DNA of 64,000 nt from the NCBI GenBank assembly GCA_053919585.1, contig CM132796.1; one strand, 5' to 3'. Under the pieces are notes generated by a model. The model saw nothing but the letters and a program-made list of their open reading frames with translations, was not told the DNA's origin and made no database searches. A program made the translations under genes and the position numbers. Shown one piece after another: positions 1-48,300 of this stretch (position 1 is the stretch's first letter; the number at the start of each line of letters is the position of its first letter). This DNA comes from Euprymna scolopes. Lineage: Eukaryota.

Positions 1-556
1 AACAATACTCTATGGTCAATAAATTTTATTTCATGCAAATTATGAAGTTTTGATCATTTCTGAAAGCACACGGAAAAAGATATTTTATTTACTCATGTAT
101 TCCTTACATACCAACAAGTTAGGTTACTTTTCTCTTTCTTCAATTAGGTTAGTGCAAAATAGTGGTGTGTTTATATATACAACTGAACGTCAAAAAACAT
201 TATTTTTGCACCAACCTAATATTTACTTCTTACTTAAATATAGTTTTATATAAACAAAAATGCATTAATAAATGTACCTATATTGGAGTAAAGTAATGAA
301 AGATTTATCGACTAATAATATTAGACTTTATTGTTGGATTCTATTTTTCAACATTGATTTCAAAATGGTTAACACTTCCTCAATAAGCTAACATGATAAA
401 ATAAAGCGCTTTCGTTATTCCAAATCTAGTTAGATTTTAAAAACAGATTTATTTGGTTTCATGTTTTAAAATTTGTTAGCAGTAGAGTATATTTAAATAA
501 ATAAATGACTAATTTAGTCATTTAATTTCCGCGCAAAATGCAATTATCAATATTAA
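1..556. repeat. Local segmental duplication, copy A (paralogous to 2990-3910)
   Basis: Collinear blocks shared with 2990-3910, e.g. tttcatgcaaat, tatttactcatgtatt, taaagtaatgaaagattt, aacattg.tttcaaaatg, aatttagtc.tt.aattt.cgcg.aaaat.caatt. Confidence 0.85.
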
Positions 557-1422
557 TACAACAAATAACTACTACTATTATTGCTACTATTAAAATCACG
601 TTTCTGAAGAATGTCACGTTGTTCTGAAAGGAAATTCAAACCAACAATTAGGGAGATGATTTTTAAAAATAACTGACTCTATATAGCTTAAATTTAGTGT
701 GAATGCGTCCTGGTTTGGCTTTAAAGGTGAAATCGAAAAAATCTCCACACTTTTAGATAAGATGTTAAGACGTCTTGCATAATGGATGACGAATTTATGG
801 GTATAATTTTGGGTACATATGTATAAGTGCCGAACCTCCTATCTACATAAACAAATAACGTTTCATATATGTGTTATTGCGTACTTTGATATTCGAATAA
901 AATTTAATGATGTCTTGTCAGGAGCACATGCTGAGTATGTACCCTTGTTGATATAACATCATGGACAAAATAAGACCGAGAAAAACGATTTCGGATAAAA
1001 ATTGTTTTAGGGTCTGTAAGTGGACAGTCGCTAAATAATATGTCAGAACGCTTCAAAATTTTATTGGCTGCGCGTTGACAACATCGTTACCTGTCGTCCT
1101 GTGTATCAGTCTACTATATGGTTATCTAAAATTAAATTATGAATAACATCGTATCTCATTTTCATAAAATAAATAATTTGCACCATGTTAATTCATAGTT
1201 TTCTCTCAATTAACCTCTGTCTTATCTTTATTCTTTAAGGCGCGACGGCAACATGTAAAACACTACAAATGAGCCAGAAAGAAAACAAAGGACAATGACC
1301 GTAGCGAACACGACGAGCCCCCAAAAAAATATTACAACACAATTACACACAAGACAAAAAAAAAACTGAAAATAATCAATGCGTATACATTTTCGCTATC
1401 GAATACAAATGAAAAAAACTAG

Positions 1423-1425
<3 letters not shown>

Positions 1426-1492
<67 letters not shown>
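1426..1492. repeat. (TA)n microsatellite, one of many TA/CA/GA tracts in the window
   Basis: Pure TA run. Similar tracts at ~1799-1875, 2330-2406, 4614-4690, 21625-21690, 23420-23476, 29182-29220, 50705-50756, 55775-55816. Confidence 0.98.
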
Positions 1493-1495
<3 letters not shown>

Positions 1496-1523
1496 AATGC
1501 AATACACACATATAATATATATA

Positions 1524-1731
1524 CATGGTACTCATGCACTTATTGATCCGTGCTGAAATAATAACGTTATTATTTAAAAAGCCATTCTTAACATGCGGGT
1601 GGGAGGGTGTTCTGTACGTATTCTGTACTTTAATTTTACAATTTAATAAAAAATCATAGCATAAAACTTTAATTAAACTTGAAAATACGATTTAAAAAAT
1701 AGCGCGGATCAGTAAGTGAATTAGCACCATG
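1524..1731. repeat. 31-bp imperfect inverted repeat next to a hammerhead motif (Penelope-type terminal-repeat remnant)
   Basis: 1524-1554 catggtactcatgcacttattgatccgtgct is the reverse complement of 1701-1731 agcgcggatcagtaagtgaattagcaccatg (26/31). Confidence 0.75.
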
Positions 1732-1749
1732 ATGTAGTTGCCTGTTTAG

Positions 1750-1793
1750 CCACACTGATGAGCTGTGAAACAGCGAAACAGTACTGTATGTGG
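1750..1793 (+). ncRNA. Minimal type I hammerhead ribozyme
   Basis: CCACA-CTGATGA-GCTG(TGAAA)CAGC-GAAA-CAGTACTG-TA-TGTGG. Stem I is CCACA/TGTGG, both core segments are intact, stem II is 4 bp, stem III is palindromic and the cleavage triplet is GUA. Confidence 0.88.
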
Positions 1794-1795
1794 AT

Positions 1796-1878
<83 letters not shown>

Positions 1879-2327
1879 TATATAGATAAACACACATATA
1901 TAAAAGTGGATCAGAAGTAACTAGAAGATTCTATGAATGGAGACTTATTGATATAGTAAAAAACTCAACAACTATGTTAAAGTAGATAAAAGCTGTCTTA
2001 AGTAGATTTACATTAGAAATGAAGGAAGTAGATATCAAGAAATATAAAATGAGGTATAAAATACAAGAATAAAACATTAAAATATTTCAGACATAACCAT
2101 ACGTGGATACGGAGGAATATATTTTTAACAATTAAAATTATATTTAAAAAGAAAAGGTAAAAATGAGAGAAAAAAATAATGATTTGATGAGTAATATATA
2201 GGTAAGTATTAATAAAAAAGAAAATAGCGCTAAGATATAATGAGGATCATTAAAGAAAAATACACAGTACAAAGAATGACGGACGAGAGGAAGAAGAAAG
2301 AGGGACAGTAAAGAAAGATAAAGTAAG

Positions 2328-2411
<84 letters not shown>

Positions 2412-2461
2412 CTACTGTTTGCCTGCTTCCGAATTAACTTTAACATGGCTGTTTTAAAATC

Positions 2462-2571
2462 AATTGAGAATAAATTCATATTGAATGATATATTTACATA
2501 ATCTAGCCCTATCTAAGACCAACTGTGTCTGAACTTATCTCATTATTTACCTAACATTTAACTATTAGCCT

Positions 2572-2615
<44 letters not shown>

Positions 2616-2645
2616 GATGATAGTTAAATATTAGGTAAATGATGC

Positions 2646-2679
<34 letters not shown>

Positions 2680-2742
2680 AGTTAAATGTTAGGTAAATGA
2701 TGAGATAAGTTCAGACACAATGGGACTTAGATTATGTAAATT
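2462..2742. repeat. Dispersed repeat with inverted arms around (TA)n; second copy at ~4505-4615
   Basis: tgtgtctgaacttatctcatt..ttacctaacatttaactat (2524-2566) is inverted at 2677-2720 and partly at 2618-2650. A direct copy lies at 4505-4615. Confidence 0.75.
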
Positions 2743-2746
2743 GTAG

Positions 2747-2793
<47 letters not shown>

Positions 2794-2814
2794 AGAGAGA
2801 GAGCGGGAGAGAGA

Positions 2815-3910
2815 TAGTTTGTGTGTAGGGGGCTTGTGGGTGTTTACATTGTCAATTTAAGAAACAAAGTTGAATCTGTCAGCGTATTCATGATAATCAA
2901 AATGGGAAATGCCGTAACAATCATGAAGTAATATAATAGTTCAAACTAATATAATGACAAAGATTAAAGTAAATAGTTCAAACCTCATCAGGCTACTCTA
3001 TGTCCAATAACAAAGTTTCATTTCATGCAAATAATGTACTTTTTAGTTATTTCTGCAAGCACATAGAACATATGTTTATTTACTCATGTATTATTTTAAT
3101 AACAATAATTTTAGAGTACTTTTTATCTTTTTTATACTTTGTGCTTCCTTTAATATAGTCTATTAGAAATATCAATCCGTTAAATTAATTTACCTGTATT
3201 GCAGAAACTATGCGACTAAAGTAATGAAAGATTTGTGGACAAAGAATATTGGACTTTATTGTATGACGCCAATTTGCAACATTGCTTTCAAAATGATTTA
3301 CTTTTTTTCAATAAGATTACATGATAAATATATCACTGTCATGATTATAAATCGAGATAGATTTTCACAACACAAATTTAATGTTTCAAGTTGTATCATT
3401 TAACTAGCCTTGGTGTCCAGCGTACCCGGGTGTTTGGCGGTGTGTCTTGAGCAACACAAAAAAAAGGAGTTGTAGACAAGTAGGCTCAAACACCTACAGC
3501 GAAGGAGGAAAAGAACGTGAAAAAAAAACGTGACGTTTTGCTGTTGCGTCCATCACCAAACCGGAAGTAGCAAATGTCTAAATTAAGCCTGCTCCAATCG
3601 AAAAGAGGGGACGCCTTTCGTCATTATCGGGGGTAAAAGCGACATCTCCTTGTAGAAAGGTGCCCAGATGAGGATGAAGGAATTTATGTTTTTAGTCATT
3701 TTTTCGATATTTGTCGTCCAAAACGATACCTATCTCCTAACAATCCGTCGCTTATGTCGAAAGTTTTAGACAAAAATACATACATACATACATAAATACA
3801 TTTAAACAGGCGTGAGATTTATATTATAGATAGCAGATGAATATGTTTAAATAAAAAAAATGCATAATTTAGTCGTTCAATTTTCGCGTAAAATACAATT
3901 CTTAATATAA
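2815..3910. repeat. Local segmental duplication, copy B (contains a Helitron insertion); 5' part repeated at 5382-5453
   Basis: 2990-3910 aligns with 1-556. The 2815-2893 block gtgggtgtttacattgt.aatttaagaaacaaa...tcagcgtattcatga recurs at 5382-5453. Confidence 0.85.
3404..3830 (-). mobile_element. Non-autonomous Helitron (same family as the 36062-37627 array)
   Basis: Minus strand reads A|TCTATAATATAAATC...GC-rich hairpin...CTAG|T, with no TSD and an (ATAC)n tract. It is absent at the paralogous site near 476. Confidence 0.85.
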
Positions 3911-4611
3911 NNNNNNNNNNNNNNNNNNNNNNNNNNNNNNNNNNNNNNNNNNNNNNNNNNNNNNNNNNNNNNNNNNNNNNNNNNNNNNNNNNNNNNNNNN
4001 NNNNNNNNNNNNNNNNNNNNNNNNNNNNNNNNNNNNNNNNNNNNNNATTATAAGAGAGCATTTGACATAGTATCCAATCTTTTTGACAATTTTCGGAATA
4101 GCTTACAACATCCAAACATTAATTAACTAACAGAATACACAATTGATAATCTCACTTAATATTAGGCAATGTTAAAATTAAGAGAGATATTTTCTATGAA
4201 AACTTGAAAATGGTATTCTAACAGTCAAGCATCTATTAGAAACAAAATACATTATAATAAGTTTGCTATATGATCAGTATGTTTGGTAATGACGTAAAGA
4301 TGTGTACTTAGTGTGATAAAAAAGGCAGGCTCATCCAGGATGGGAATTTTAAACTTCCGACAACAGACCTAATAAACAATGGTGACAATGAGAGAGGCTA
4401 CAATATTTATGGATATTAGGAGATAAGATTAATAATATGGGGAGAAACAAATAAAGTCACAGCCAGGTACAACAGGAGATTCCGAGTTATTCCTAAATTA
4501 AGTTATTGAGAATAAATTCCTATTGAATGAGCTATTTACATTATCTAGCCTTACCTAAGTCCACTGTGTCTGAACTTATCTCATCATTTTTACCTAACAT
4601 TTAACTATTAT

Positions 4612-4694
<83 letters not shown>

Positions 4695-5125
4695 AAAATT
4701 AAAATTAAATTTACCAAAATGATCCAAGATGGTAAAACTAAAGTATTGGCAGCCCTGTTGAAAGCATATCCTTTTTTTCTTTAATTAATATTATTGGAAT
4801 TTTTCCCCATTTTCCTTGTACATATTTGTGAATTATTCCACGGATTTTGGCTTCTTGGATAATTTTTGACCATATTCCGATTACGCGATTTCCTTGGATT
4901 TTACTTGTACGAATGAAAATTAAATGAACTTTCTTGGACTTACATTTTTGGGTTTTACCGTAATTGGATGCTTTTCTTTTCATCTGGCTGTCCATTCCCG
5001 TGAAATCACCTTTTTCTTCATCATGTTCCCTCTGCTTCACTTTTTGTTATCAAGTTGCAATTTCAATTGCAGTTTCATAAAATACTTTGTATGGAAAATC
5101 CGATCCCGCATTTTGCTATTTCCTA

Positions 5126-5173
5126 CCCTCTGATGAGAAGGAAAGTATTTCTTCGAAACTGCGCGGATTAAGG
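5126..5173 (+). ncRNA. Degenerate hammerhead-ribozyme motif
   Basis: CCCT-CTGATGA-GAAG(GAAAGTATTT)CTTC-GAAAC-TGCGCG-GAT-TAAGG. The core and stem II are intact; the cleavage-site U and stem I are decayed. Confidence 0.55.
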
Positions 5174-5539
5174 ACTATCCACTTATTAAGTGTTTCCTTT
5201 CCAGATTAAATATGTTTTAACTCTTTTTCAAAGTGGTTTTACATGTTTNNNNNNNNNNNNNNNNNNNNNNNNNNNNNNNNNNNNNNNNNNNNNNNNNNNN
5301 NNNNNNNNNNNNNNNNNNNNNNNNNNNNNNNNNNNNNNNNNNNNNNNNNNNNNNNNNNNNNNNNNNNNNNNNNNNNNNNNNTTGTATTTGTGGGCGTGTG
5401 GGTGTTTACATTGTTAATTTAAGAAACAAATCGAAGCCATCAGCGTATTCATGAGTAAAGTCACAGCTGGGTACAACAGGAGATTCAGAGTCATTCCTAA
5501 ATCGCATCTATACTGTCGCAATAAAATATCTACCATCAA

Positions 5540-28361: not shown

Positions 28362-28943
28362 CTACAGACTGCGCCGCGTCGACACACACAACGCCAAGTC
28401 AAACACAAAATCAAGTACACTCAACATCAAATACACTCAATATCGTCTTACCATCCACGCTTACCCTGTGAACACGGAGTATGGAAATTCTCATATGCAC
28501 AAAACAAAAGCACTGAAAAAAACTAAAATACCATAACAAAGGGTAAGGATATCGAGTAAACGTTGGATAAAGTGATGGTTTAAATTATTACGATTTTGCC
28601 AAGGATCGAACCTGGAATCTTTCGAGCCATAGTCTGACGTGTTATTCATTGCGCAACAAGTCCATTCTATATGCCGAAAGAGGTTACCGTGAATGTATAC
28701 AGACAGTGCTAAATTCCGTTGAAATGGGCAGGTAACTTTCTCGACAATTGCACAAAATGGCCCAACAACCCTTATTTCACGCTTTTTGTGTGACTCGGCG
28801 TTGTTCGTTAAGAACCAGGGACTCACACCTTTCAGGGAAAAAAAGAATTTCAATTTGGTGCATCCGTTCGAAAGTTGTATTTGTATATATACGAACAGGC
28901 ATAAACAAATAATAAACATTTAGAATTTTATTAATAGAGTAGA
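28362..28943 (-). mobile_element. Probable non-autonomous Helitron carrying a tRNA-Arg copy
   Basis: Minus-strand start A|TCTACTCTATTAATAAAA. A GC-rich segment precedes a degenerate GTAG|T end, so the 3' boundary is uncertain. Confidence 0.45.
28591..28663 (-). pseudogene. tRNA-Arg(ACG)-derived pseudogene
   Basis: The 73-nt sequence GGACTTGTTGCGCAATGAATAACACGTCAGACTATGGCTCGAAAGATTCCAGGTTCGATCCTTGGCAAAATCG is collinear with the animal tRNA-Arg-ACG consensus. The anticodon now reads ATG and the stems are mismatched. Confidence 0.82.
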
Positions 28944-29176
28944 TGTTTGTTAATAATCATATTACTAATCCCGTCCGATTGCTTGTTGCTTTGTTTAAAA
29001 TTTACTATCCATAGATTGATCTAAATATATCCAAGATGAAATAAGTATTTCATGGCATTGGATTCGTAAATAAATCTATAATTATATTTTGTATATTTAT
29101 AAAGTAATTTAAATGTGTCCGTATAAAACTAAATAATAAAGCAATATGTAATAAAATCATATCAATCACAGTAGAA

Positions 29177-29224
<48 letters not shown>

Positions 29225-29303
29225 GAAAGTATTATGTCGATCTAGCTATGTCATGCTATCATTTGATTCGTTTAAAAAATGTCCTTTGTATGCGTAGAAC
29301 AGA

Positions 29304-29455
29304 TAGTGAGGTGGCTTATGATAATGATTGTTACCTGCTGGCCCAAAGCACCAAATTCGGCACACATATACTTTGGTACAAAGTCAAACTTTTTGGAGGG
29401 GGGTACCCGATTTTAAAGGTCAAGGTCAGGGCAAGGTCAAAGGTCAAAGGTCAAA
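29304..29455 (+). repeat. Academ TIR (3' end of the ORF) with five AGGTCA hexamers
   Basis: Shares tgctggcccaaagcaccaaa and cgattttaaaggtcaaggtca with the reverse complement of 34613-34774. Confidence 0.92.
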
Positions 29456-29964
29456 CATCGCTATTTGTTTTTTTTCAACTTTCTTATTAATTTCCAATAC
29501 AAAATGTGCTGCCATTACATAAATTACTGTTAATGCTCTTAAGGGAATTATATATGTAATTCAAGCTACATTTCTTTTAAGTGTATATTGAATTGTAGAA
29601 CAAGATCATAGGTCACCACTTGTAATTTCAATGTATATAACAATGAATTATTGGCATCAGTATTTATATATGAATTCTATTGGACAAGTAGGGCATTATT
29701 TATAAAGACATTAGTGCAATAAACAAACAAGTTGCATGCATGTTTCAGATACAATACAATAAGTCAAGCATAACACCATTCACTTCTATAATAATATGTA
29801 CTGTAGAACTTAACCGGATGCGAATATTGTAGTGGTAATCAGACTACTTCCTATTTAATGCAACATTCTTGCACTATTGTTGCAAGAATTGCTTACATGG
29901 ACTACCTCTATAAAACTCTGCATGCATATCTTCTTGAAAGGAGTACAAAAATATGGAAGGGTCG

Positions 29965-32900
29965 TCATGTTTCACAATCACCTCGGCACTGACATAGTGT
30001 TGTACATGTCAGGCCAGCTTTCTCGCATTTACAGTTCTTAACACACATAGGAACTGCTTTGCAACCACACTTTATGAGTTCTTTGCACGCAGCAGCAGCT
30101 GGAATTGTGGTCCAGATGGAATGCCACCCTGTGTCTGATTTGGACCATCCAAAACCAGCTGGGCTCGGGGCAGCAACGACTGGTTTCAGACTCTCTGTCC
30201 AGATACTGGCCTGGTACACACATCGGTTGACATGTTGGAGCAGAGCATTTTGTGTTGGTGGTAGCCTTTCCATTAGTTTCACTCTGTTCGGAAAGAGGTC
30301 TTGCCGAAGGTAATTAACTTTGCTATGGTGAGTTGTGTTGTCGTACATGGCATAGGTGAACTGCTCAATTAGCCTGAATACTGGAGATGATGTTTCTAGA
30401 GGAACAAATGGTGAGGACGATGCTGTAGTAAACCCTTCTGTCGAAATTGGGAGTGATTTCCAGGTCTTCCATGCTGATTTTTTTCCTTTACCATTAAATT
30501 GGGATGTTACATCACATCCAGTGAAAGCATGGAAGAAGGGTAGTGCTTGGCATTTATCTTCACCAAGTTCCAGGCAAACAGAGTTGATATGGTAGTATCG
30601 AAAGTGCCTTCCTGCACCAAATCCAACCCACAGATCTAAGTCAGGATACCAACTGACAAAACGGTGATAAACTCCTACAAGGACCACAACCACGTCTGTA
30701 TCAACAGTTCTGACAAGAACTGATGTTGCACCTTTCCTCAGGGCATCGTACACATGCAAAGAAATCCTGCTGTCTTCCTCCTCGTGGTCACACTTGTCCA
30801 TTGTACATCCAGGCTGATTGGACAGAACTCTTTCTCCGGAGGTAATGTATACCCATTTTTCAGGTGGGTAGACATGGTTGGCTACTTCTCCTGAGAGCAA
30901 AGCAAAAAGCTCTTCTTTGTTTCTGTCATTCTGCAGAAACCCAGCAAAGGACGCGGGAAGTTTGGCATTGCGAGACACCTTCCTGCGTACCCCCTTCCCT
31001 CGTTTCTCACGTGTAGTTGCCTTCAAGCTGTCTGGATGATATATGTCCCAAACAATGTCAATTCGAGTGCTGCTTTGCAGTTGCCTCTCTGTCCAAGGAA
31101 TGAAGATTTTGTCACTGTACTCCCCAAATGTACATTTGTGTTTATGCGGCAGGATGTGTACCATGGCAGCCCCATCGAAAATCTTTGCATCGAAGTGTGA
31201 TGGTGGTTCTGGCTGAATACTTGGGTCGATGCAAGCCAACAGTTCTGATTTATTTCCTGGTAGACGAAGTTTCCCATTCAGTGACAATACTGGTGGCCAT
31301 GGGTGATTTTCATGCGAGAAAAACTCCTCGAGGTTTGTGTCACGGACCTGAGTAGCAATGAAGAGTTGGCTGAATAGGTTATAATCACTCTTTATTTCCT
31401 GCAACTGAGTCACGTTTCTGCTGGGAGTACTGGTGTGTGGTCGCTTTACAAGTGGAAGTTTATTTTTCTTGTTTATGCTGTGGATTGATTTCTCTCGTTT
31501 CACCAGCACATCACTAACATACCTTGAGTACTGCTCTTTGCCCAGTTGCTCCATTCCGTATAGTGCTTCCACAACCTGTTCATCCATACAGTCATGGGTG
31601 TCAAGAACAATGAGTTCCTTTGCTGTGTTCAAGAATGGATTCCCCATTGATTTGATAACATCACACATATTGTTGACTTGTTTGTGGAATGTTTCCTGAA
31701 TGGCATGTCCTTGCTCGTGACTCTGGAAAGAAGGTTCCTCAGACAGGTTATTCATCTCTTCAAATTCATCGAGAATCCTTGCCTGCTCTGGACCGGCAAT
31801 CATCCATCGTTTCAAGGCAGCAGGATTCGTGGTCAGGCCAATTGCACCACCAGAATGTTTCACTTTTTAATTGTTCTGCTCGTGTGCTTGGTCTAGAGGC
31901 ATGGCTGAGAATGGTCGCCTACCCTTCAGGAACACCCAGTTTTTCTTGAATTCAGCTCTGATTGATGGCGGAAGAGTCTTCATGTCTTTTATGTGTACTG
32001 GCAGCCAGCGAGAGTAGTTCATGCGATCAAGCACAAAGAACCATGGTGCCAATGCTTCCAGCACTTCTACATAAAGAGCAAAATTCTTCTCCCTGTGTGA
32101 CCTCACAAAGATAAGGACTAGCAGCTCCAGCTGAAGAATCCTGTCATAGAATGCGAAGGTTGGACTGTTTTGTGTCATGTCAGTTCTCCAGTCTTCGAAG
32201 TGTATGCTGCGTTCTGGACACATTTCATGAAAGGAAGCACGCTGCAACTTTGCAAGAGTCATTGCTGTCACCTGATGTGCATGCCGTGTTCTGGTTAAGT
32301 GGGCAGCCTTCAGGAAGGAGTCAGCAGTTCCAGCTGTAGCAACACCACTCTCAGTCAGTGCAATACACCAACCAGATTCTTCCAAGAGATCCCCAACCAT
32401 TCTCCACAATGCCATCTCAGTATGTAAGCCTCCCAGGACAACAACATATTCAGATTCGCCAAGGGTTTCAGACCAATTCCACTGTGCATATTTGGCCAAA
32501 GCAAAGAGAGGTTGATCCACTGCAATAACAGGTATTCGCCCAGGGTTTCGCAATGTTGTTATTTTTTTCAGTACTTCCATACCATGCTTGGCCATAGCCA
32601 TCGATGCAGCCCTTTCGTAAAAGAGTGGCAGTAGAACACTTGTCCCGGGAATATCAGTAACTTCGCCTTCGCGTGCAGAATGATGCGAGGCCCAGGCCAT
32701 GATATCACCTTTTTCTAATTTGTTCTTTTGGGCTACAGGTATCCTTTCCTCTAACCACTGATTTTCTTTGTATATTGCTTCACATAGAACAGGTTCAGGA
32801 TCAGGGTCTTCCATAGCTGCAGCTTCTGTGACATTAACAGTGTCGGTGTTGCAAGCAATAGCTGGAACTATTCGATAACTATCTGGTAGGGATGGATTTC

Positions 32901-34434
32901 GAATGTGTGCCTGTGGTGGTATTTTGATGGGCTCTCTACTTGTCTCTTGCTTATTCTCTGCAGGAAACTGGAACACACTGATACTTGTGCCATGGAATGA
33001 TCCTTCAGCTGTTTGTGATGTTGGATTGTGATCCAGATTGTCTAGTGCCCCTGCTGTGAACACACCATCAATAAGTTGCACAGGACACACCACACCTTCC
33101 TCTTGATATCGTTCACATACTGCATTTGTCAGCCAGTCTTCGACTTCTAACACTCTTTAATAGCTGACACTGATTCCGAGTTTATGGAGATGTGTCAACA
33201 TTTTCTTGCTCCGGGTTTGCGTGTGAACACTCAAGCCTACATATAAGGGAAGCGGTGGTTCTTTGGATCTATGGTGGTGTGGGTTCTCTGCTACTTTGGG
33301 CTTATCTTTACAATTGAATCTAATCAGCTGGCATATGGTCAGACATTCTTGTGAATTTGTTGCGGTCTGGTCCTTGATGTTTGAACCATATAACAACATG
33401 GAGATCAAGACTTTGAGTGAATTTGGCACTGAGTCATCTTGACAGTCTGTGGTGAAACTTCCACTGAATGTACAGAATTTTGTCTTTGAAATTTCTTGCC
33501 GTATTAACTTTGCTATGTGTACCATTGAGAGAGCGTCCTTCTCAAAATCACGAGACTTCAACTCCTCCTTTATGAGCTTCTGAAGGCCTTCATTAAAGAC
33601 AAGAACTGTTTGTTTGCCAACTGATTGTTCCTGACACTGATCTTTGTAATGATTCAAAAGTTTGTTTTTCAGCCGTGTCTTGTTCACCTGTTTTTCATAT
33701 CCCAAGACTGCAAAGCGAGCTACACACATTTTGTGCAGATCTACTAATGGAAATATGTACTCCCCGTCTTCAACATTCGCTTCAATATAAGATATCATTT
33801 CTACAAATACCCTTGAGTCTGTCATTGATTGATCAGTTGTATCCGATAATGTAGCCATGGATCGCTTGTAACTTCTGTATCGAACACGGAATGCATTCAT
33901 ACCTTGTTTGTGATACTTTGCTTCAATAGCAACAAGATCCCCATCTGCAATAGTAGCTAACATGTCAGTATCTTGTAGTTCTGTTGCTTGCTCACGCAGT
34001 GTTTTGTCTAGTTCTAAAGTTTCACATTTGTGAAGTATACCATCTGACTTCTTGCAAAATATACACATGTTGCAACCCATTACTTCATCACTTCGAGATA
34101 CACGTTTGGATTTTCTTTGTCCAGTACTAACATCATCGCCAGAGTGGTCAACAATTCTATTTCTAGCATTTCTCTCTTGTGCCCTTAACAATTTTGATTT
34201 GGCAAATAATAAATGACAGTTTTTATGCCACTTAGCACAATTCACATTGAGGTCATTGGTTGTCACATCATCACCAAAGCAAATTCTTGCAGGCAATGAT
34301 TTCAGTTCTTTAAAACCATGTACATTTTTCATAAATTCTTCATATGCTTGTGAACCTTTGCCATCCTGTTGTGTTGCAGGACACTTTAATGCCCCATCTC
34401 CTGTACCGCATATGATGCACTTTGACCAATCCAT
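29965..34434 (-). pseudogene. Academ transposase-XPG nuclease-Cys-rich polyprotein; single frame with two internal TAA codons (33157-33159, 31867-31869)
   Basis: The three listed ORFs are in one frame: ...ISVSY*RVLEVED... and ...DQAHEQNN*KVKHSGG... Motifs: N-terminal CxxC/HxxC; DNLDH, VDQPL, GGLHTEM, DQAHEQ (transposase core); IFDG, DIVWD, HEEED, DTDV, TGCD (XPG/FEN1-like); C-terminal Cys cluster. First ATG at 34434 (MDWSKC). Confidence 0.88.
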
Positions 34435-34612
34435 GTTGCATTGAAGATTGAAATGCAAGCTCTCCACTACTGACTTGCCTTGCTGACTTCAGTTCTCAAC
34501 CAGGAAGCACTCTGAAACATAAAAATACATATTATTACAAATCCTGTTACCAACTATACTACTTGAAGCAAGATAAAACTAAAATGACACCTGAAATTAC
34601 AGTACTACCATA

Positions 34613-34774
34613 TTTTGACCTTTAACCTTCGCCTGACCTTGACCTTGACCTTTAAAATCGTGTACCCCCCTTCAAAAATGTTTGTATTAACCCAAAGTAT
34701 AGATGTACCAACTTTGGTGCTTTGGGCCAGCATGTAACGATTTGGTCATATTTTGGCCATAAGCCACCCAACTA
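34613..34774 (-). repeat. Academ TIR (promoter side) with TGACCT array
   Basis: Reverse complement of the left TIR. TGACCT at 34616, 34634, 34640 and 34646. Confidence 0.92.
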
Positions 34775-35236
34775 AGAAGTATTTTTATTACATCATCGGG
34801 TGATTTGCGGACTGTAATTTCAAAAAAAACATAATATACTCTGAAAGAATTTCCCATTCATATTTCTTAAAACTTTCTTTAAATAAGAATTCTTTTAATT
34901 AAGACTTAATTTGTTTCGAACATTATAAGTGATGTATTAGTATAGAAACCTGAAATTAGCCGCGATGTTATAAGGATCAACGAAGTCCGCAAGGACCTGC
35001 GGCGCGGTAGTTAGAGTACTTGGAAAAATCAATTGTAAAAAGTGATATTCTCCTGAAGGTTCAAGATTCAATCGTCAACGTGGGCGAGCGAAAAGTATAA
35101 TTGCGAATTACTGAGGACATCTATACAGTCATGGCTGACGAAACATAAACATGCTACCCCAGTAAAGTGTTCCGCTCGAAATTTCGGCCAAATTCCCAAG
35201 TTCGACAGAAACTTTCCCGAGTAAAATAAGATACAT

Positions 35237-35275
35237 CTGAAGAAGGTCGGAGGTTACATCAACCGAAACGGTGTG
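35237..35275 (+). other. Hammerhead-like relic within a dispersed repeat (~35040-35400)
   Basis: CTGAAGA-A-GGTCGG..TCAACC-GAAAC-GGTGTG. Both core halves are present, but the stems are poor and there is no clear stem I. Confidence 0.35.
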
Positions 35276-36061
35276 AAAATCACACTCAAGATGAGAACAG
35301 TAGTCTGATGAATCCAAATAAGACAAAGTTTCTATACATCCAATACATTTATTGTCATCGAAATCGGTGAAATCAGTTTTCAAAGAAAATCGATTGCTCG
35401 CTGTAGTCTTGCATCCACCGTGATAAACTGGGATGTAGGTAATACAGGCCTCTTAGCAATGACTTAATTCAAAATAAATTGTAATCAATATTGCACTGTA
35501 GAGAATCTAATGGGGTATTATATAAGATTATCTGTAAATAACAGCTTCACTTAAAGTTTAAAATAAAAATACCAAGTATGATAGTTCACTTATACTCTGT
35601 ACAAACATATTCATTTTGAACACGTTCCTGTCTCATCAAAGCGCCTTCTGTTGATTTTATACGGCGGGCTTTTCTACTTGGGCGGTTATAAAACTTCTTA
35701 GATACACTTGTGATGTAAGGTTTTGTAAAAGTAATAATTTTGATAAAAATCGAACTTCTATCTTTTATCATTTTTTCTGATTATTAAATTACAATACTTA
35801 TTACAACGATCTCACATACACCCCGCATGTACACACACGTTCAAAAGAAAATATCCTTTTTATATAAATGTAGCGATTTCTCCACTAAAAAATGTGTAAA
35901 TAGAAAATGTTTAACAAGCATAGAATTATCTGTACGTAGGTGCGTTAGCAAGGTCGTAGCACAAATTAAATCAATATCAATATATTAGTTAAAACTAACC
36001 GAACTATGCTATAAAAACTCCTGTTAAAAACTAAATAAAATAATTGTGTCCTATATTTACA

Positions 36062-45399: not shown

Positions 45400-48300
45400 C
45401 AAATGTTGTATATCAAAATTGGCATGCACAGTGGATTGTAACTAAGATGCATAGATGCATATATCATGGAGAGGTGGAAAATATATGTTATAGTCGTCTG
45501 CGAGTGATATGTAATGCTATTATTCTATCGGCTAGACATCGTTTATTATTGTTGCGTGGTGCATTACTTATAGCTGAGAATTACTGAGGGAATGTTTAAA
45601 ACAAAAGATATTTGTCGTGCATAACGGGTTGAAGTCTTACAAAAGGTGCATATACGGTGACAGATTATGTTTGCTTGCATAGGTATGTATGCAGGGTAGG
45701 TCAACTTTCTTTAGCAATGATAAAGAATAGTTATAAGGGAGGCGGTACAGTTTTTGTAAGTCGGTGTGGATAGGAAGCCACAGAGATTAGTCCCTAGATG
45801 GTTTCTCTATTTAACTTTTCTTTTGTACCTATATTAGAATATGATTTCTGATTAGGAGTTCATGATGTATGATTTTTTGGTGTTTTAATAATATATGTGG
45901 CTCTTGCGTTTCAAAGAATGCAGTAACGCAAACCTGAACAGTAAGTTCTCGACTTATTTAGTATTTCTCATTTGAAAGAACTTTATTTTATTTTCTTTTA
46001 TCTTACTAGACTAGTTAGAGTAGTTTTGGCATGTGGTGTCTTGGTAGAGAAGTAGTTCATGTTGTTTGAACATCTGACGTTTATCGGAAATACAGATAAT
46101 CTTATGTATGTGTGTATTTTGGAATAGTTTGTAGTTTTGTTGGGTAGCTAATAGCTGTAAAGGGGGGTAGTTGTGTTCTGGTTTGTAGGAGAATGTGTAT
46201 GGACGGATTCTCTAATTGCTGGCTTCGGGATAATTTTCGGGTAAATGTATCGTTTTTTTAGGCTTTGAGAATCAGTTTAGATAGTGTTGGTTACTGGGGC
46301 TTGACAGGTCAACGGATTGTCTATTGCGCTTTGGAGCAATGAGGTGAATGGCCATAACATCAGAGTGTACAGTCATTATCCAAGGGCACAATTTTGGAAC
46401 GATAGCAGTTAGAGTTAGGGTTGGTAAGATTTGAGCTGCTGTGTAGATTTTGCTGTGTAGATTTTATTTGTTTTATTAACATATTATAATATTCTGTGCT
46501 AAATTAGACATAGTAGGGATATATATTCTAATTCATATTTTATTTAAAATAGTCTTGTATTCGTGCTGGTGTTTGAATGGGTTTTCTACTATCTTGAATT
46601 TTTTTATTGATACGAGGGGCGTGTAATAAGTAATGCACCTGACCCACTTCCAGTTGTCTGATTTAGCTGAAATTTTGAATGTGCAATGATTTATATCTCT
46701 ACGGGTTATGCCATATAGTACAGCTCTAAACTAATTGTGGTTTTTGTTTTACACGTGTTTGAACTGAGTCAGGTGTGAAATAGAGCCTGTTGAATGGCGA
46801 GCAGTGATCGGGTTCTTGTGTTTGAAAGGACGCACACCACAGGAGACTTTTGATGAAATTAAAGAAACTTATGTTGATAATGTCCCATCATATGCCCTTG
46901 TAAACGCTGGCATTGTAAATTCAAACATGGTAGGAAGTCTGTGGAAACAGCTGCCAGAGATGGTCGCTCCCTCTTCTGCCATTGATGAGACATCTGTCCG
47001 TCAAGTTGAGGCTGCCATGTAGGAAGATTGGCGCATTACTATTCGCCAAATAGCCCAAGATGCCAATATAAGAACAGCGCCTGTGGAAACTATCATTCAT
47101 GACAATTTTCATATGAATAAGGTGTCTGCCAGATGGATTACCAGATTGTTCACACCATTCGAGAAGCGAAAACGCGTCGAGTGCTCGAGGATGAATTTGG
47201 AGATGTGCCAAGAAGATGAGTCAAAGTTTGTCAAAGGACTGATTGCACAGGATGAAACCTGGGTTCATCACTATGATACAATGAGCAAATCCCAGTCAAT
47301 GCAGTGGAAGCATTTGGGGTCACCACCTCCAAAGAAGGCAAGGGTGCAGCCCTCCACTGGCAAGGTCAGGTTCACAGTCTTCTGTGACCAGGACGGAGTA
47401 GTGATGACAGATTTCCTGGCAAATGGTACCACAATTACACGAGCCTATTATGCTTCACTTTTGAAGAAATTAAGAGAAGCTATCAAAATCAGGAGGCGGG
47501 GCAAGATCAGCAAAGGTACCCTCCTCATGCGGGACAACGCTCCGGTCCACAACTCGCATGTCGCCAGATAAAAACCACGGGCGTGTGGTAATGAAATCCT
47601 ACCCATCCTAACTACTCTCCTGACCTTGCACCCTCTGACCCTCACCTCTTCCAGCCATGAAGTTATTTTTGAAAGGAAAGCGTTTCTCAGATGATGAAGT
47701 CACGTCTTGGTTGGAGGACCAACCTGGGGTTTTCTACAAAAACGGTATTCAAAGCTGCATCAAACGATGGGAGAAATGCAAGACTCTAGGTGGTTCCTAT
47801 GTAGAGAAAGACTAATAACTGTACCAAGTTTCGTTGCTCTACTGCTATGGGAAGTAGGTCAGGGCCATTATTATTGCACGCCCCTCGTATTAGTGTTTAC
47901 CCTATTGTGGTAAAATGGGTAAAACCGAATCTTCTCTCTCCTAATCATTTGTGGGTTGATGTCTTTTAAATTATTAGTAAGGTTGTTATTTTGATTAACG
48001 TTAGGTCGTATTGTAATTTCTTGTTTAGATATGCACCTGGTAATGTTATGGAGGATTACTTTAATAGGTTTAAATTTTTGTGATTATTATTGACATTGTA
48101 CTTAATTTTTTGTGTATCTGGAGTTAGGACGGTGTTGTAAAAGTTAAAATTTACTTCGAAAATATTATAGTTGTCGGATAGATCAGATGTTCTATTCTAT
48201 ATTGATATCCTGGTTTGCTTAATGACAAATTTATGGTAATTGGAGAATTGATTGACATAGTGAAGTCATAAATAAGGCTTGTGGTAAGAGCAATAGAAGT

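What the first reader, a model, noticed from the sequence alone, without database searches (positions are those of the whole stretch)
29304..34774. Complete AcademX transposon coupling a DDE transposase to an XPG/FEN1-like nuclease; far better preserved than its neighbours
Seen: TAG..CTA termini, an exact AGA TSD, ~150-bp TIRs, and a 4.47-kb frame with no frameshift that is visibly more GC-rich than the flanks, while other elements here are heavily decayed. Known: Academ elements encode a ~1500-aa transposase + XPG + Cys-rich protein and make 3-4-bp TSDs, and the role of the XPG domain is not established. Inference: this is a recent insertion, possibly horizontally acquired, and an easily repaired template for studying a poorly characterised transposition chemistry.
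Basis: partly seen in the sequence, partly recalled or inferred. Interest (0 to 1): 0.75.

Follow-up and report, generated by a model that had tools for sequence, protein, structure and literature searches.

The report
Young dead copy of AcademX transposon
This is a complete but dead copy of a young, multi-copy jumping gene of the known Academ type, whose single large protein joins a cut-and-paste transposase to a FEN1/XPG-like DNA nuclease. It is ordinary in kind, but sister copies with unbroken genes exist and the insertion is missing in another sequenced animal.

Summary
Window 29304-34774 is a 5,471-bp DNA transposon with TAGTG…CACTA-type ends, imperfect inverted repeats of about 152 and 162 bp, an AGA 3-bp target duplication, and one minus-strand frame of 1,489 codons without frameshift.

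The genome holds at least 26 full-length copies 98.0-99.1% identical to it. All end at the same bases, and 24 of 26 have a perfect 3-bp duplication. One public DNA run has a contig joining 29300 to 34775, which is the empty site.

Predicted folds:
- Residues about 380-900 form a DDE transposase core, closest to P element transposase (Z 12.3).
- Residues 1061-1425 form a FEN1/Exo1/XPG-type 5' nuclease (Z 15.4).
- The protein ends in a Cys-rich CXC-like tail.

This architecture, the 3-bp duplication and the size fit published AcademX. Similarity to reference Academ sequences could not be tested.

The window copy is dead. Its two TAA stops are private GAA>TAA changes. It also has 20 missense changes, four at family-invariant residues, and one changed base in a terminal repeat. 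Three sister copies have open frames.

Horizontal transfer gets no support. The GC excess is a coding effect, and a second AcademX-like family lives in the same genome. The scan had already noted an Academ copy elsewhere in this genome. Verdict: new member of a known kind.

The parts
29301..29303 (.). Left copy of the 3-bp target-site duplication (AGA)
   Evidence: The empty-site contig in run X3 keeps a single AGA.
29304..34774 (-). Whole element, 5,471 bp; the gene reads on the minus strand
   Evidence: 26 full-length genomic copies align over bases 1-5471 exactly.
29304..29455 (+). Left terminal inverted repeat, about 152 bp, on the 3' side of the gene; the terminal 17 bp read TAGTGAGGTGGCTTATG
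29417..29453 (+). Five AGGTCA repeats in the subterminal region; candidate transposase-binding sites (inferred)
   Evidence: Kept in all 26 copies and mirrored in the other TIR.
29965..34434 (-). Transposase-nuclease reading frame, 1,489 codons plus stop, broken by two TAA codons in this copy
   Evidence: The sister copy L008:1841-6307 is open.
33295..34434 (-). N-terminal region, residues 1-380, with two conserved CxxC…HxxC motifs (C6/C9/H70/C73 and C124/C127/H175/C178); presumed zinc-binding DNA-recognition part. C178 is Gly in this copy.
   Evidence: Invariant columns of alignment A1. The fold was not predicted.
33157..33159 (-). First in-frame stop (codon 426, TAA); GAA in the other copies
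   Evidence: (33159 A>C in all four runs).
31735..33294 (-). DDE transposase core: RNase H-like fold with an all-helical insertion domain, residues about 380-900. Proposed catalytic residues are D465 (33040-33042), D640 (32515-32517) and E852 (31879-31881).
   Evidence: AF2 pLDDT 88.6. VIA Z: 12.3 to P element transposase, 9.1 to Hermes and Transib, 8.5 to RAG1. These residues are invariant in 42 relatives.
31867..31869 (-). Second in-frame stop (codon 856, TAA), four codons after the proposed catalytic E852; GAA in the other copies
   Evidence: (31869 A>C).
30160..31254 (-). FEN1/Exo1/XPG-type 5' nuclease domain, residues 1061-1425. Conserved acidic residues are D1087, D1126/D1130, E1218/E1219/D1221, D1245/D1247 and D1308.
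   Evidence: AF2 pLDDT 90.3. VIA Z: 15.4 to Exo1, 14.3 to FEN1, 12.7 to XPG, 12.9 to XRN1/2, 12.1 to T5 FEN. Invariant columns.
29974..30087 (-). C-terminal Cys-rich (CXC-like) tail, residues 1450-1487
   Evidence: Conserved Cys columns. The Pfam TCR/CXC match is only weak (E 2.4). The model has low confidence here.
34613..34774 (-). Right terminal inverted repeat, about 162 bp, on the 5' side of the gene. Base 34770 differs from all other copies.
34616..34651 (-). Four AGGTCA repeats (read as TGACCT on the + strand), mirror image of the left cluster
34775..34777 (.). Right copy of the 3-bp target-site duplication (AGA)

Best explanation
Window 29304-34774 is one inactivated copy of a young, autonomous cut-and-paste DNA transposon family of the AcademX type.

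Shown:
- The family has at least 26 full-length copies, about 46 by read depth, each 0.2-1.3% from the family majority.
- Target joining is 3 bp staggered.
- Copies decayed neutrally after insertion from a master with an open 1,489-codon frame.
- This particular insertion is absent in another sequenced animal.
- The protein has a DDE/RNase H-like core with a helical insertion domain, and a complete FEN1/XPG-type nuclease fold with its acidic residues conserved.

Inferred mechanism:
- The N-terminal zinc-binding region, and perhaps the CXC tail, recognise the ends, probably through the mirrored subterminal AGGTCA repeats.
- D465/D640/E852 nick the ends to expose 3'-OH groups, then join them to target phosphates 3 bp apart.
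- The fused structure-specific 5' nuclease cuts or trims the other (non-transferred, 5') strand. It would play the part that hairpin formation plays in hAT/Transib or that TnsA plays in Tn7. I put about 0.4 on this specific role.

The window copy cannot make the protein: it has two nonsense changes and damaging missense changes. At best it could be moved in trans.
For: Copy structure:
- Copies, ends and TSDs.
- Empty site: joint 29300|34775 with 3 shared letters, contig depth 10.6 against about 490 for the element. Flanks are unique in the assembly.

Family history:
- 696 of 755 variant alleles are singletons.
- Codon positions are hit 247:203:229.
- Synonymous/nonsynonymous/stop fractions are 0.255/0.682/0.063, against a neutral expectation of 0.259/0.701/0.041.
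- The majority-rule frame is open.

Open copies: L008, L014 and L019.

Protein:
- Folds.
- 124 relatives of about 1,500 aa in molluscs, cnidarians, tunicates, insects and echinoderms, with the catalytic candidates invariant.

Cross-species and literature:
- A 46%-identical relative in another animal (L038) has ends TAGTAGGGCAGCTTA…, a length of 5.48 kb and a TTA 3-bp TSD.
- PMC10045372: AcademX makes 3-4-bp TSDs and carries a nuclease.
- PMC10294476: curated bivalve Academ elements average 5,565 bp.
Against: - No direct comparison with a reference Academ transposase was possible. Repbase is not available, and Kojima 2020 and Yuan & Wessler 2011 are not held.
- Pfam and PDB sequence searches do not recognise the nuclease or the core. 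The only hit is a weak one to DUF6589, so both domain calls rest on predicted folds and motif order.
- Catalytic residue assignment is by topology and position, not by 3-D superposition.
- No experiment shows activity.
- RNA-library contigs cover the whole element including the TIRs, so they may be DNA carry-over.
Confidence: 0.87

Rival explanations
1. The family entered this genome recently by horizontal transfer.
For: - The burst is young and star-like, with no intermediate-age copies among the 26 scored.
- Outside its own 90% cluster the closest protein is only 62% identical.
- Several differently labelled organisms (A-F) hold near-identical element sequence, and runs from organisms A and C show the same majority sequence.
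Against: - The GC excess is a coding effect. GC at codon position 3 is 0.398, and the element's non-coding parts match the flanks.
- The genome holds a second, 40-45%-distant AcademX-like family with at least 16 long copies, and about 2,600 first-look candidates. This points to long residence of the superfamily.
- An 88%-identical open ORF occurs in a transcriptome taken from whelk tissue, as expected for vertical descent among related gastropods.
- Organism names are coded, so A-F may be one species complex.
Confidence: 0.1
2. It is not a member of Academ. Instead it would be a P/hAT/Transib-like transposase lineage that independently acquired a FEN-type nuclease.
For: - The best structural match of the core is P element transposase (Z 12.3), followed by Hermes, Transib and RAG1.
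- Sequence similarity to named Academ references was not tested.
Against: - P elements make 7-8-bp and hAT 8-bp TSDs (established knowledge), whereas here the TSD is 3 bp in 24 of 26 copies.
- There is no THAP or BED domain.
- From my knowledge, transposase plus XPG nuclease in one protein of about 1,500 aa with a 3-4-bp TSD is described only for AcademX (also PMC10045372).
Confidence: 0.06
3. The two TAA codons are functional. They would be programmed read-through or a split into three expressed modules, as a sister note from the scan suggested.
For: Both stops are TAA in a similar context, AT|TAA|ARAGTG, and they fall between recognisable regions.
Against: - None of the other 25 full-length copies has a stop at either codon.
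- All four sequencing runs read C at + strand positions 33159 and 31869, which gives GAA.
- Stops are scattered at different codons in other copies, at the neutral rate.
- The second stop lies 4 codons after the proposed catalytic E852, inside the core and not between modules.
Confidence: 0.01
4. It is a domesticated host gene derived from a transposase.
For: The frame is long and the protein family is conserved across phyla.
Against: The sequence is multi-copy, has TIRs and TSDs, decays neutrally, and has a polymorphic empty site.
Confidence: 0.01

Closest known systems
AcademX lineage of the Academ superfamily of eukaryotic DNA transposons (Kapitonov & Jurka 2010; Kojima 2020, as cited in PMC10045372 and PMC5751038)
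   Same: - One protein of about 1,500 aa joins a DDE transposase to an XPG-type nuclease and ends in a Cys-rich tail.
- 3-bp TSD.
- TIRs.
- About 5.5 kb long, against a bivalve Academ mean of 5,565 bp (PMC10294476).
- Found in molluscs and other animals.
   Different: Nothing tested differs. Sequence similarity to the reference families could not be checked here. This family (ends TAGTGAGGTGGCTTA…, about 46 copies, under 1.3% diverged) is probably an undescribed family of that lineage.
AcademH lineage (helicase-encoding Academ)
   Same: By the literature it belongs to the same superfamily. A weak Pfam DUF6589 match at residues 745-895 may link the cores, but what DUF6589 is remains unknown.
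   Different: AcademH makes 9-10-bp TSDs and encodes a helicase (PMC10045372). Here the TSD is 3 bp, no helicase domain is found, and a nuclease is present instead.
Drosophila P element transposase (PDB 6p5a/6pe2), and Hermes/hAT, Transib and RAG1
   Same: RNase H-like DDE core interrupted by a large helical insertion domain, with the third catalytic acid on a helix after the insertion. Z is 12.3, 9.1, 9.1 and 8.5 over about 340 residues.
   Different: - Sequence identity is 5-11%.
- There is no THAP or BED domain.
- The TSD is 3 bp rather than 8 or 5 bp.
- About 105 extra residues lie between strands 2 and 3.
- A nuclease domain is fused to the core.
FEN1 / Exo1 / XPG (Rad2) / GEN1 structure-specific 5' nucleases
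   Same: The fold matches over 250-260 residues covering the whole catalytic domain (Z 15.4-12.1). Acidic residues are conserved at the strand and helix ends where FEN1 carries its seven carboxylates (assignment from my knowledge of FEN1).
   Different: - Sequence identity is 12-14%.
- Pfam XPG_N/XPG_I and PDB profile searches do not detect it.
- It is fused C-terminally to a transposase and followed by a CXC-like tail.
- Its substrate is unknown.
Tn7 TnsA/TnsB division of labour
   Same: Working analogy only: a DDE enzyme handles the 3' ends and a separate nuclease handles the 5' ends.
   Different: TnsA is a restriction-enzyme-like fold on a separate protein. The Pfam TnsA-like hit here (E 0.046, residues 156-193) is at chance level.

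Membership tests
AcademX (Academ superfamily) | Target-site duplication of 3 or 4 bp | tested here: met
   24 of 26 full-length copies have a perfect 3-bp TSD of varied sequence. The empty site keeps one AGA. A relative in another species has a TTA TSD. Criterion taken from PMC10045372.
AcademX (Academ superfamily) | DDE/RNase H-like transposase | tested here: met
   AF2 model with pLDDT 88.6. The top 33 structural matches are all DDE transposases or recombinases. D465, D640 and E852 are invariant in 42 relatives. The catalytic assignment is inferred.
AcademX (Academ superfamily) | XPG-type nuclease encoded with the transposase | tested here: met
   Residues 1061-1425 match Exo1, FEN1, XPG and GEN1 at Z 15.4-12.1, in the same ORF. 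The acidic residues are invariant. Pfam does not detect this domain by sequence.
AcademX (Academ superfamily) | No helicase (which distinguishes it from AcademH) | tested here: met
   No helicase family appears in Pfam scans of the whole ORF or of its parts. There is no second long ORF in the element.
AcademX (Academ superfamily) | Terminal inverted repeats and a size of about 5-6 kb | tested here: met
   TIRs of about 152 and 162 bp. Length 5,471 bp against a mean of 5,565 bp for curated bivalve Academ (PMC10294476).
AcademX (Academ superfamily) | Significant sequence similarity to reference Academ transposases and placement in the AcademX clade | not testable with these tools
   Repbase is not available, and the defining papers are not held. 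None of the 124 homologues carries an Academ name.
P element superfamily | 7-8-bp TSD, THAP DNA-binding domain, GTP-binding insertion domain | tested here: not met
   The TSD is 3 bp and no THAP domain is found. Only the core fold is shared.
FEN1/XPG (Rad2) nuclease family | PIN-like 5' nuclease fold with H3TH and a conserved set of carboxylates | tested here: met
   Fold Z of 15.4 over 260 residues. D1087, D1126/D1130, E1218/E1219/D1221, D1245/D1247 and D1308 are invariant. Sequence-family membership (Pfam XPG_N/XPG_I) is not met.

The most novel reading that the evidence does not exclude
The family may still be transposing in living populations.

- Three natural copies keep the full 1,489-codon frame, or the frame with a small in-frame deletion.
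- The youngest copy is 0.18% from the family majority.
- At least this one insertion is not fixed.

If one copy is competent, it would be the first experimentally tractable, naturally active AcademX element. It would give a direct handle on why a DDE transposase needs a fused FEN1/XPG-type nuclease. My proposal is that the nuclease cuts the second strand, an alternative to the hairpin and TnsA solutions.
Probability: 0.35. Interest if true: 0.6.

Novelty: new member of a known kind. Interest (0 to 1): 0.4.

Why it matters
Academ is one of the least studied DNA transposon superfamilies. To my knowledge no Academ element has been shown to move in an assay, and the job of its XPG-type nuclease is unknown.

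- This family offers young copies with exact ends, a documented empty site, natural open frames, and confident domain models with named candidate catalytic residues. The nuclease question can therefore be tested without reconstructing anything.
- The core's closest solved relative is P element transposase, which bears on how Academ relates to the hAT/P/Transib/RAG group.
- For genome annotation, this is a recently expanded repeat of about 5.5 kb and about 46 copies. It should be masked, and its ORFs should not be called as host genes; relatives in databases are mis-named as kinesin, potassium channel or dehydroquinate synthase.

Tried and rejected
- Pfam on the three stop-delimited pieces and on domain pieces found nothing except a sub-threshold DUF6589 match and chance-level hits to TCR/CXC, TnsA-like and Ribosomal_L18.
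- PDB sequence search with the C-terminal piece, and with a 42-sequence family profile, found nothing real.
- The defining papers (Kojima 2020; Yuan & Wessler 2011) are not in the library. The searches 'Academ + XPG' and 'XPG nuclease' returned unrelated papers. The one paper mentioning DUF6589 does not say what it is.
It shows no excess stability (z = +1.7), and Rfam finds nothing in 28500-36000.
- The contig for relative P0008 gave no DNA. The Logan contig of P0002 (L037) lacks the element ends, so no TIR could be read from it.
- I did not run the large HMMER representative search. The protein was not left open after the word search and folds, and the operators had flagged its cost.
The pieces were searched apart, and then a natural open sister copy (L008) was used.
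The N runs of the window lie outside the element and were left alone.


Full report
**What is in the sequence**

On the minus strand, three ORFs of 436, 428 and 632 codons lie head to tail in one frame. Translation of 29905-34599 shows one frame, from MDWSKC… to …CRGDCET, with two in-frame stops and no frameshift.
- The ends read TAGTGAGGTGGCTTATG on the left and, in reverse complement, TAGTTGGGTGGCTTATG on the right.
- Each end is flanked by AGA.
- The ends are the tips of imperfect inverted repeats of about 152 and 162 bp, about 80% identical with a 10-bp indel.
- The CDS has GC 0.437 against 0.344 for the window.

**Is it more than chance**

The window's own assembly is 5.9 Gb in 925 contigs. 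It holds 26 full-length copies 98.0-99.1% identical to the window copy, plus fragments.
- All 26 align from base 1 to base 5471, so the boundaries are exact.
- In 24 of 26 copies the three bases outside the two ends are identical to each other and differ from copy to copy: TAT, AAA, TTT, ATA, TGG, AAC and others. This establishes a 3-bp target-site duplication.
- In a public DNA run (X3, coded organism A), one contig of depth 10.6 joins 29300 to 34775. It skips 5,474 bases, with three letters fitting either side. That is the empty site with a single AGA.
- Both flanks are single-copy in the assembly, so this contig is the orthologous or allelic site and not a paralogue.
- It is the only contig of that run covering the left flank, so that animal seems to lack the insertion. 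Contigs cannot prove absence.
- The contig differs from the window flanks at 11 of 337 bases plus two indels. It therefore comes from a divergent haplotype, population or sister species.
- Element depth of about 490 against 10.6 gives about 46 copies.

**History of the family**

- Copies differ from the majority base by 0.18-1.26%. The window copy is at 0.75%, 19th of 26.
- 696 of 755 minor alleles are singletons, which is a star-like burst.
- Differences fall evenly on codon positions (247:203:229).
- They are synonymous, nonsynonymous or nonsense in the proportions expected without selection: 0.255/0.682/0.063 observed against 0.259/0.701/0.041 expected.
- The majority-rule frame has no internal stop.

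So an intact master multiplied recently and the copies then decayed neutrally.

Three copies still have open frames:
- L008 is full length.
- L014 has a 12-bp in-frame deletion.
- L019 has a 3-bp deletion.

**State of the window copy**

- Its two stops (codons 426 and 856) are private. No other copy has them, and all four runs read C at + strand positions 33159 and 31869, which gives GAA. Both are GAA>TAA changes in a similar context.
- It carries 20 further missense changes. Four hit residues invariant across 42 relatives: C178G in a CxxC…HxxC motif, Q633R, W763Y, and A1220E in the nuclease EEAD motif.
- It has one changed base (34770) in the right terminal repeat.

It is a dead copy, and not the best one. 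The sister note that reads the two stops as a designed three-module split is contradicted.

**The protein**

Pfam finds nothing above threshold, and PDB sequence and profile searches find nothing. The word search with the natural open copy L008 found 124 relatives.
- Many are full-length at about 1,480-1,560 aa and 35-62% identity.
- Named sources include Haliotis rubra, Nematostella, Ciona and Frankliniella, some under misleading names. The protein atlas adds echinoderm and mollusc clusters.
- A 42-sequence alignment gives invariant D465/N466/D468, D640, H671/E673 and D848/H851/E852. It also gives D1087, D1126/D1130, E1218/E1219/A1220/D1221, D1245/D1247 and H1302/G1306/D1308.
- Two N-terminal CxxC…HxxC motifs and a C-terminal Cys cluster are also conserved.

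AlphaFold models built on that alignment are confident.
- Nuclease: residues 1040-1489 have pLDDT 90.3. Residues 1061-1425 align to Exo1 (Z 15.4, 260 residues, rmsd 3.6), FEN1 (14.3), XPG/Rad2 (12.7-12.2), GEN1, XRN1/2 and T5 flap endonuclease. Foldseek's list holds only this superfamily.
- The conserved acids sit at the strand ends and helix starts where FEN1 has its seven carboxylates. This mapping is from my knowledge of FEN1 and was not superposed.
- Core: residues 380-900 have pLDDT 88.6. They match P element transposase (Z 12.3, 341 residues), Hermes, Transib, RAG1, ISCth4 and, more weakly, retroviral integrase and RNase HI.
- By topology, D465 ends strand 1, D640 follows strand 4, and E852 lies on the helix after an all-helical insertion domain.
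- Their spacing from the aligned termini matches D230/D303/E531 of P element transposase (numbers from memory), once a 105-residue loop between strands 2 and 3 is allowed for.
- The CXC-like tail is poorly modelled and matches Pfam TCR only at chance level.

**What it is**

The published description of AcademX is a DDE transposase and an XPG-type nuclease in one protein of about 1,500 aa with a Cys-rich end, a 3-bp TSD, TIRs and a length of about 5.5 kb.
- PMC10045372 states that AcademX makes 3-4-bp TSDs and carries a nuclease, while AcademH makes 9-10-bp TSDs and carries a helicase.
- PMC10294476 gives a mean length of 5,565 bp for 100 curated bivalve Academ families.
- The fuller domain description is from my memory of Kapitonov & Jurka 2010 and Kojima 2020, which I could not read.
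- A 46%-identical relative in another animal genome (L038) has ends TAGTAGGGCAGCTTA…TAAGCTGCCCTACTA, a length of 5.48 kb, TIRs of about 150 bp and a TTA TSD. The terminal motif TAGTRRGG..GCTTA and the 3-bp stagger are therefore lineage features.

The one defining feature I could not test is sequence similarity to reference Academ transposases.

**How it most likely works**

Shown: cut-and-paste anatomy, a 3-bp staggered joining, an excision-free empty site, and two catalytic folds with conserved active-site residues.

Inferred:
- End recognition goes through the zinc-binding N-terminus, perhaps at the AGGTCA clusters. These number five on the left and four mirrored on the right, about 115-150 bp from each tip. 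They are kept in all copies and make up 9 of the window's 36 such hexamers.
- The DDE core does the 3'-end nicking and strand transfer.
- The FEN1-type domain cleaves or trims the 5' (non-transferred) strand. DDE enzymes of this fold class need either a hairpin or a second nuclease to finish the double-strand break. I give about 0.4 to this specific role.
- Alternatives are flap or gap processing at the donor or target after integration.

**Horizontal transfer**

There is no positive evidence for it.
- The GC excess is limited to the CDS (codon position 1 0.521, position 3 0.398). The element's non-coding parts (0.336 and 0.382) match the flanks (0.352 and 0.367).
- CpG observed/expected is 0.41 in the CDS against 0.84 in the window. 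I leave this unexplained.
- The genome has a second AcademX-like family, only 40-45% related to the same queries, with at least 16 long copies, two of them without stops. The first look found about 2,600 candidates.
- The own-family 90% cluster includes an 88%-identical 1,368-aa open ORF from the 'Piridium sociabile' transcriptome. That parasite was taken from foot tissue of the whelk Buccinum undatum (10.1101/636183). The transcript is probably host-derived.
- This suggests that the window's host is a related marine gastropod and that such elements are transcribed there. Both points are inferences.
- Several coded organisms hold the element at near identity, and organisms A and C have the same majority sequence. 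Without names this cannot be weighed.

**Expression**

Oligo-dT and poly(A) RNA libraries contain contigs over most of the element. They include the TIRs and carry indels of particular copies. Transcription of this family in this host is therefore not shown.

**Verdict**

This is a new family of a known lineage. Its value is practical: a young AcademX family with natural open copies and a documented empty site.

Noticed in passing
window 29417-29453 and 34616-34651: Clusters of five and four AGGTCA hexamers lie in mirror orientation inside the two TIRs, about 115-150 bp from the tips, and are kept in all 26 copies. The hexamer is also the nuclear-receptor half-site, so these elements may scatter such sites through the genome.
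   Followed up: partly
window ~34990-35090: A tRNA-like SINE head (A-box-like GCGCGGTAGTTAGAG, B-box-like GGTTCAAGATTCAATC) lies just right of the element. Its k-mer depth in DNA run X3 is about 1e5, against 10.6 for single-copy sequence. Rfam gives no match.
   Followed up: partly
window 47083-47571 (+): A 162-aa ORF matches Pfam Transposase_1 (mariner, partial DDE; E 5.7e-17). It is a decayed mariner remnant.
   Followed up: no
G000, e.g. C5:161532540-161537012 and C1:88068605-88072870: A second AcademX-like family is only distantly related to this one. It has at least 16 near-full-length copies with few stops, and two have none.
   Followed up: partly
window 33157-33159 and 31867-31869: Both private stops arose by the same change (GAA>TAA, a G>T transversion) in the same local context AT|GAA|ARAGTG. 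This may be coincidence or a local mutational bias.
   Followed up: partly
window 29965-34434: CpG observed/expected is 0.41 in the element's CDS against 0.84 for the whole window. This might reflect past germline methylation of master copies. It is unexplained.
   Followed up: no
L038:2580-8060: This is a full AcademX relative in another animal genome (ENA ERZ28496113), lying next to a 7tm_1 receptor gene. It has a 1,523-aa open ORF, the same terminal motif and a TTA TSD.
   Followed up: yes
proteins P0086, P0115, P0118: Public Frankliniella fusca proteins named 'Chromosome-associated kinesin KIF4', '3-dehydroquinate synthase' and 'Potassium channel GORK' are full-length or long relatives of this transposase. 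The names look like annotation errors.
   Followed up: no
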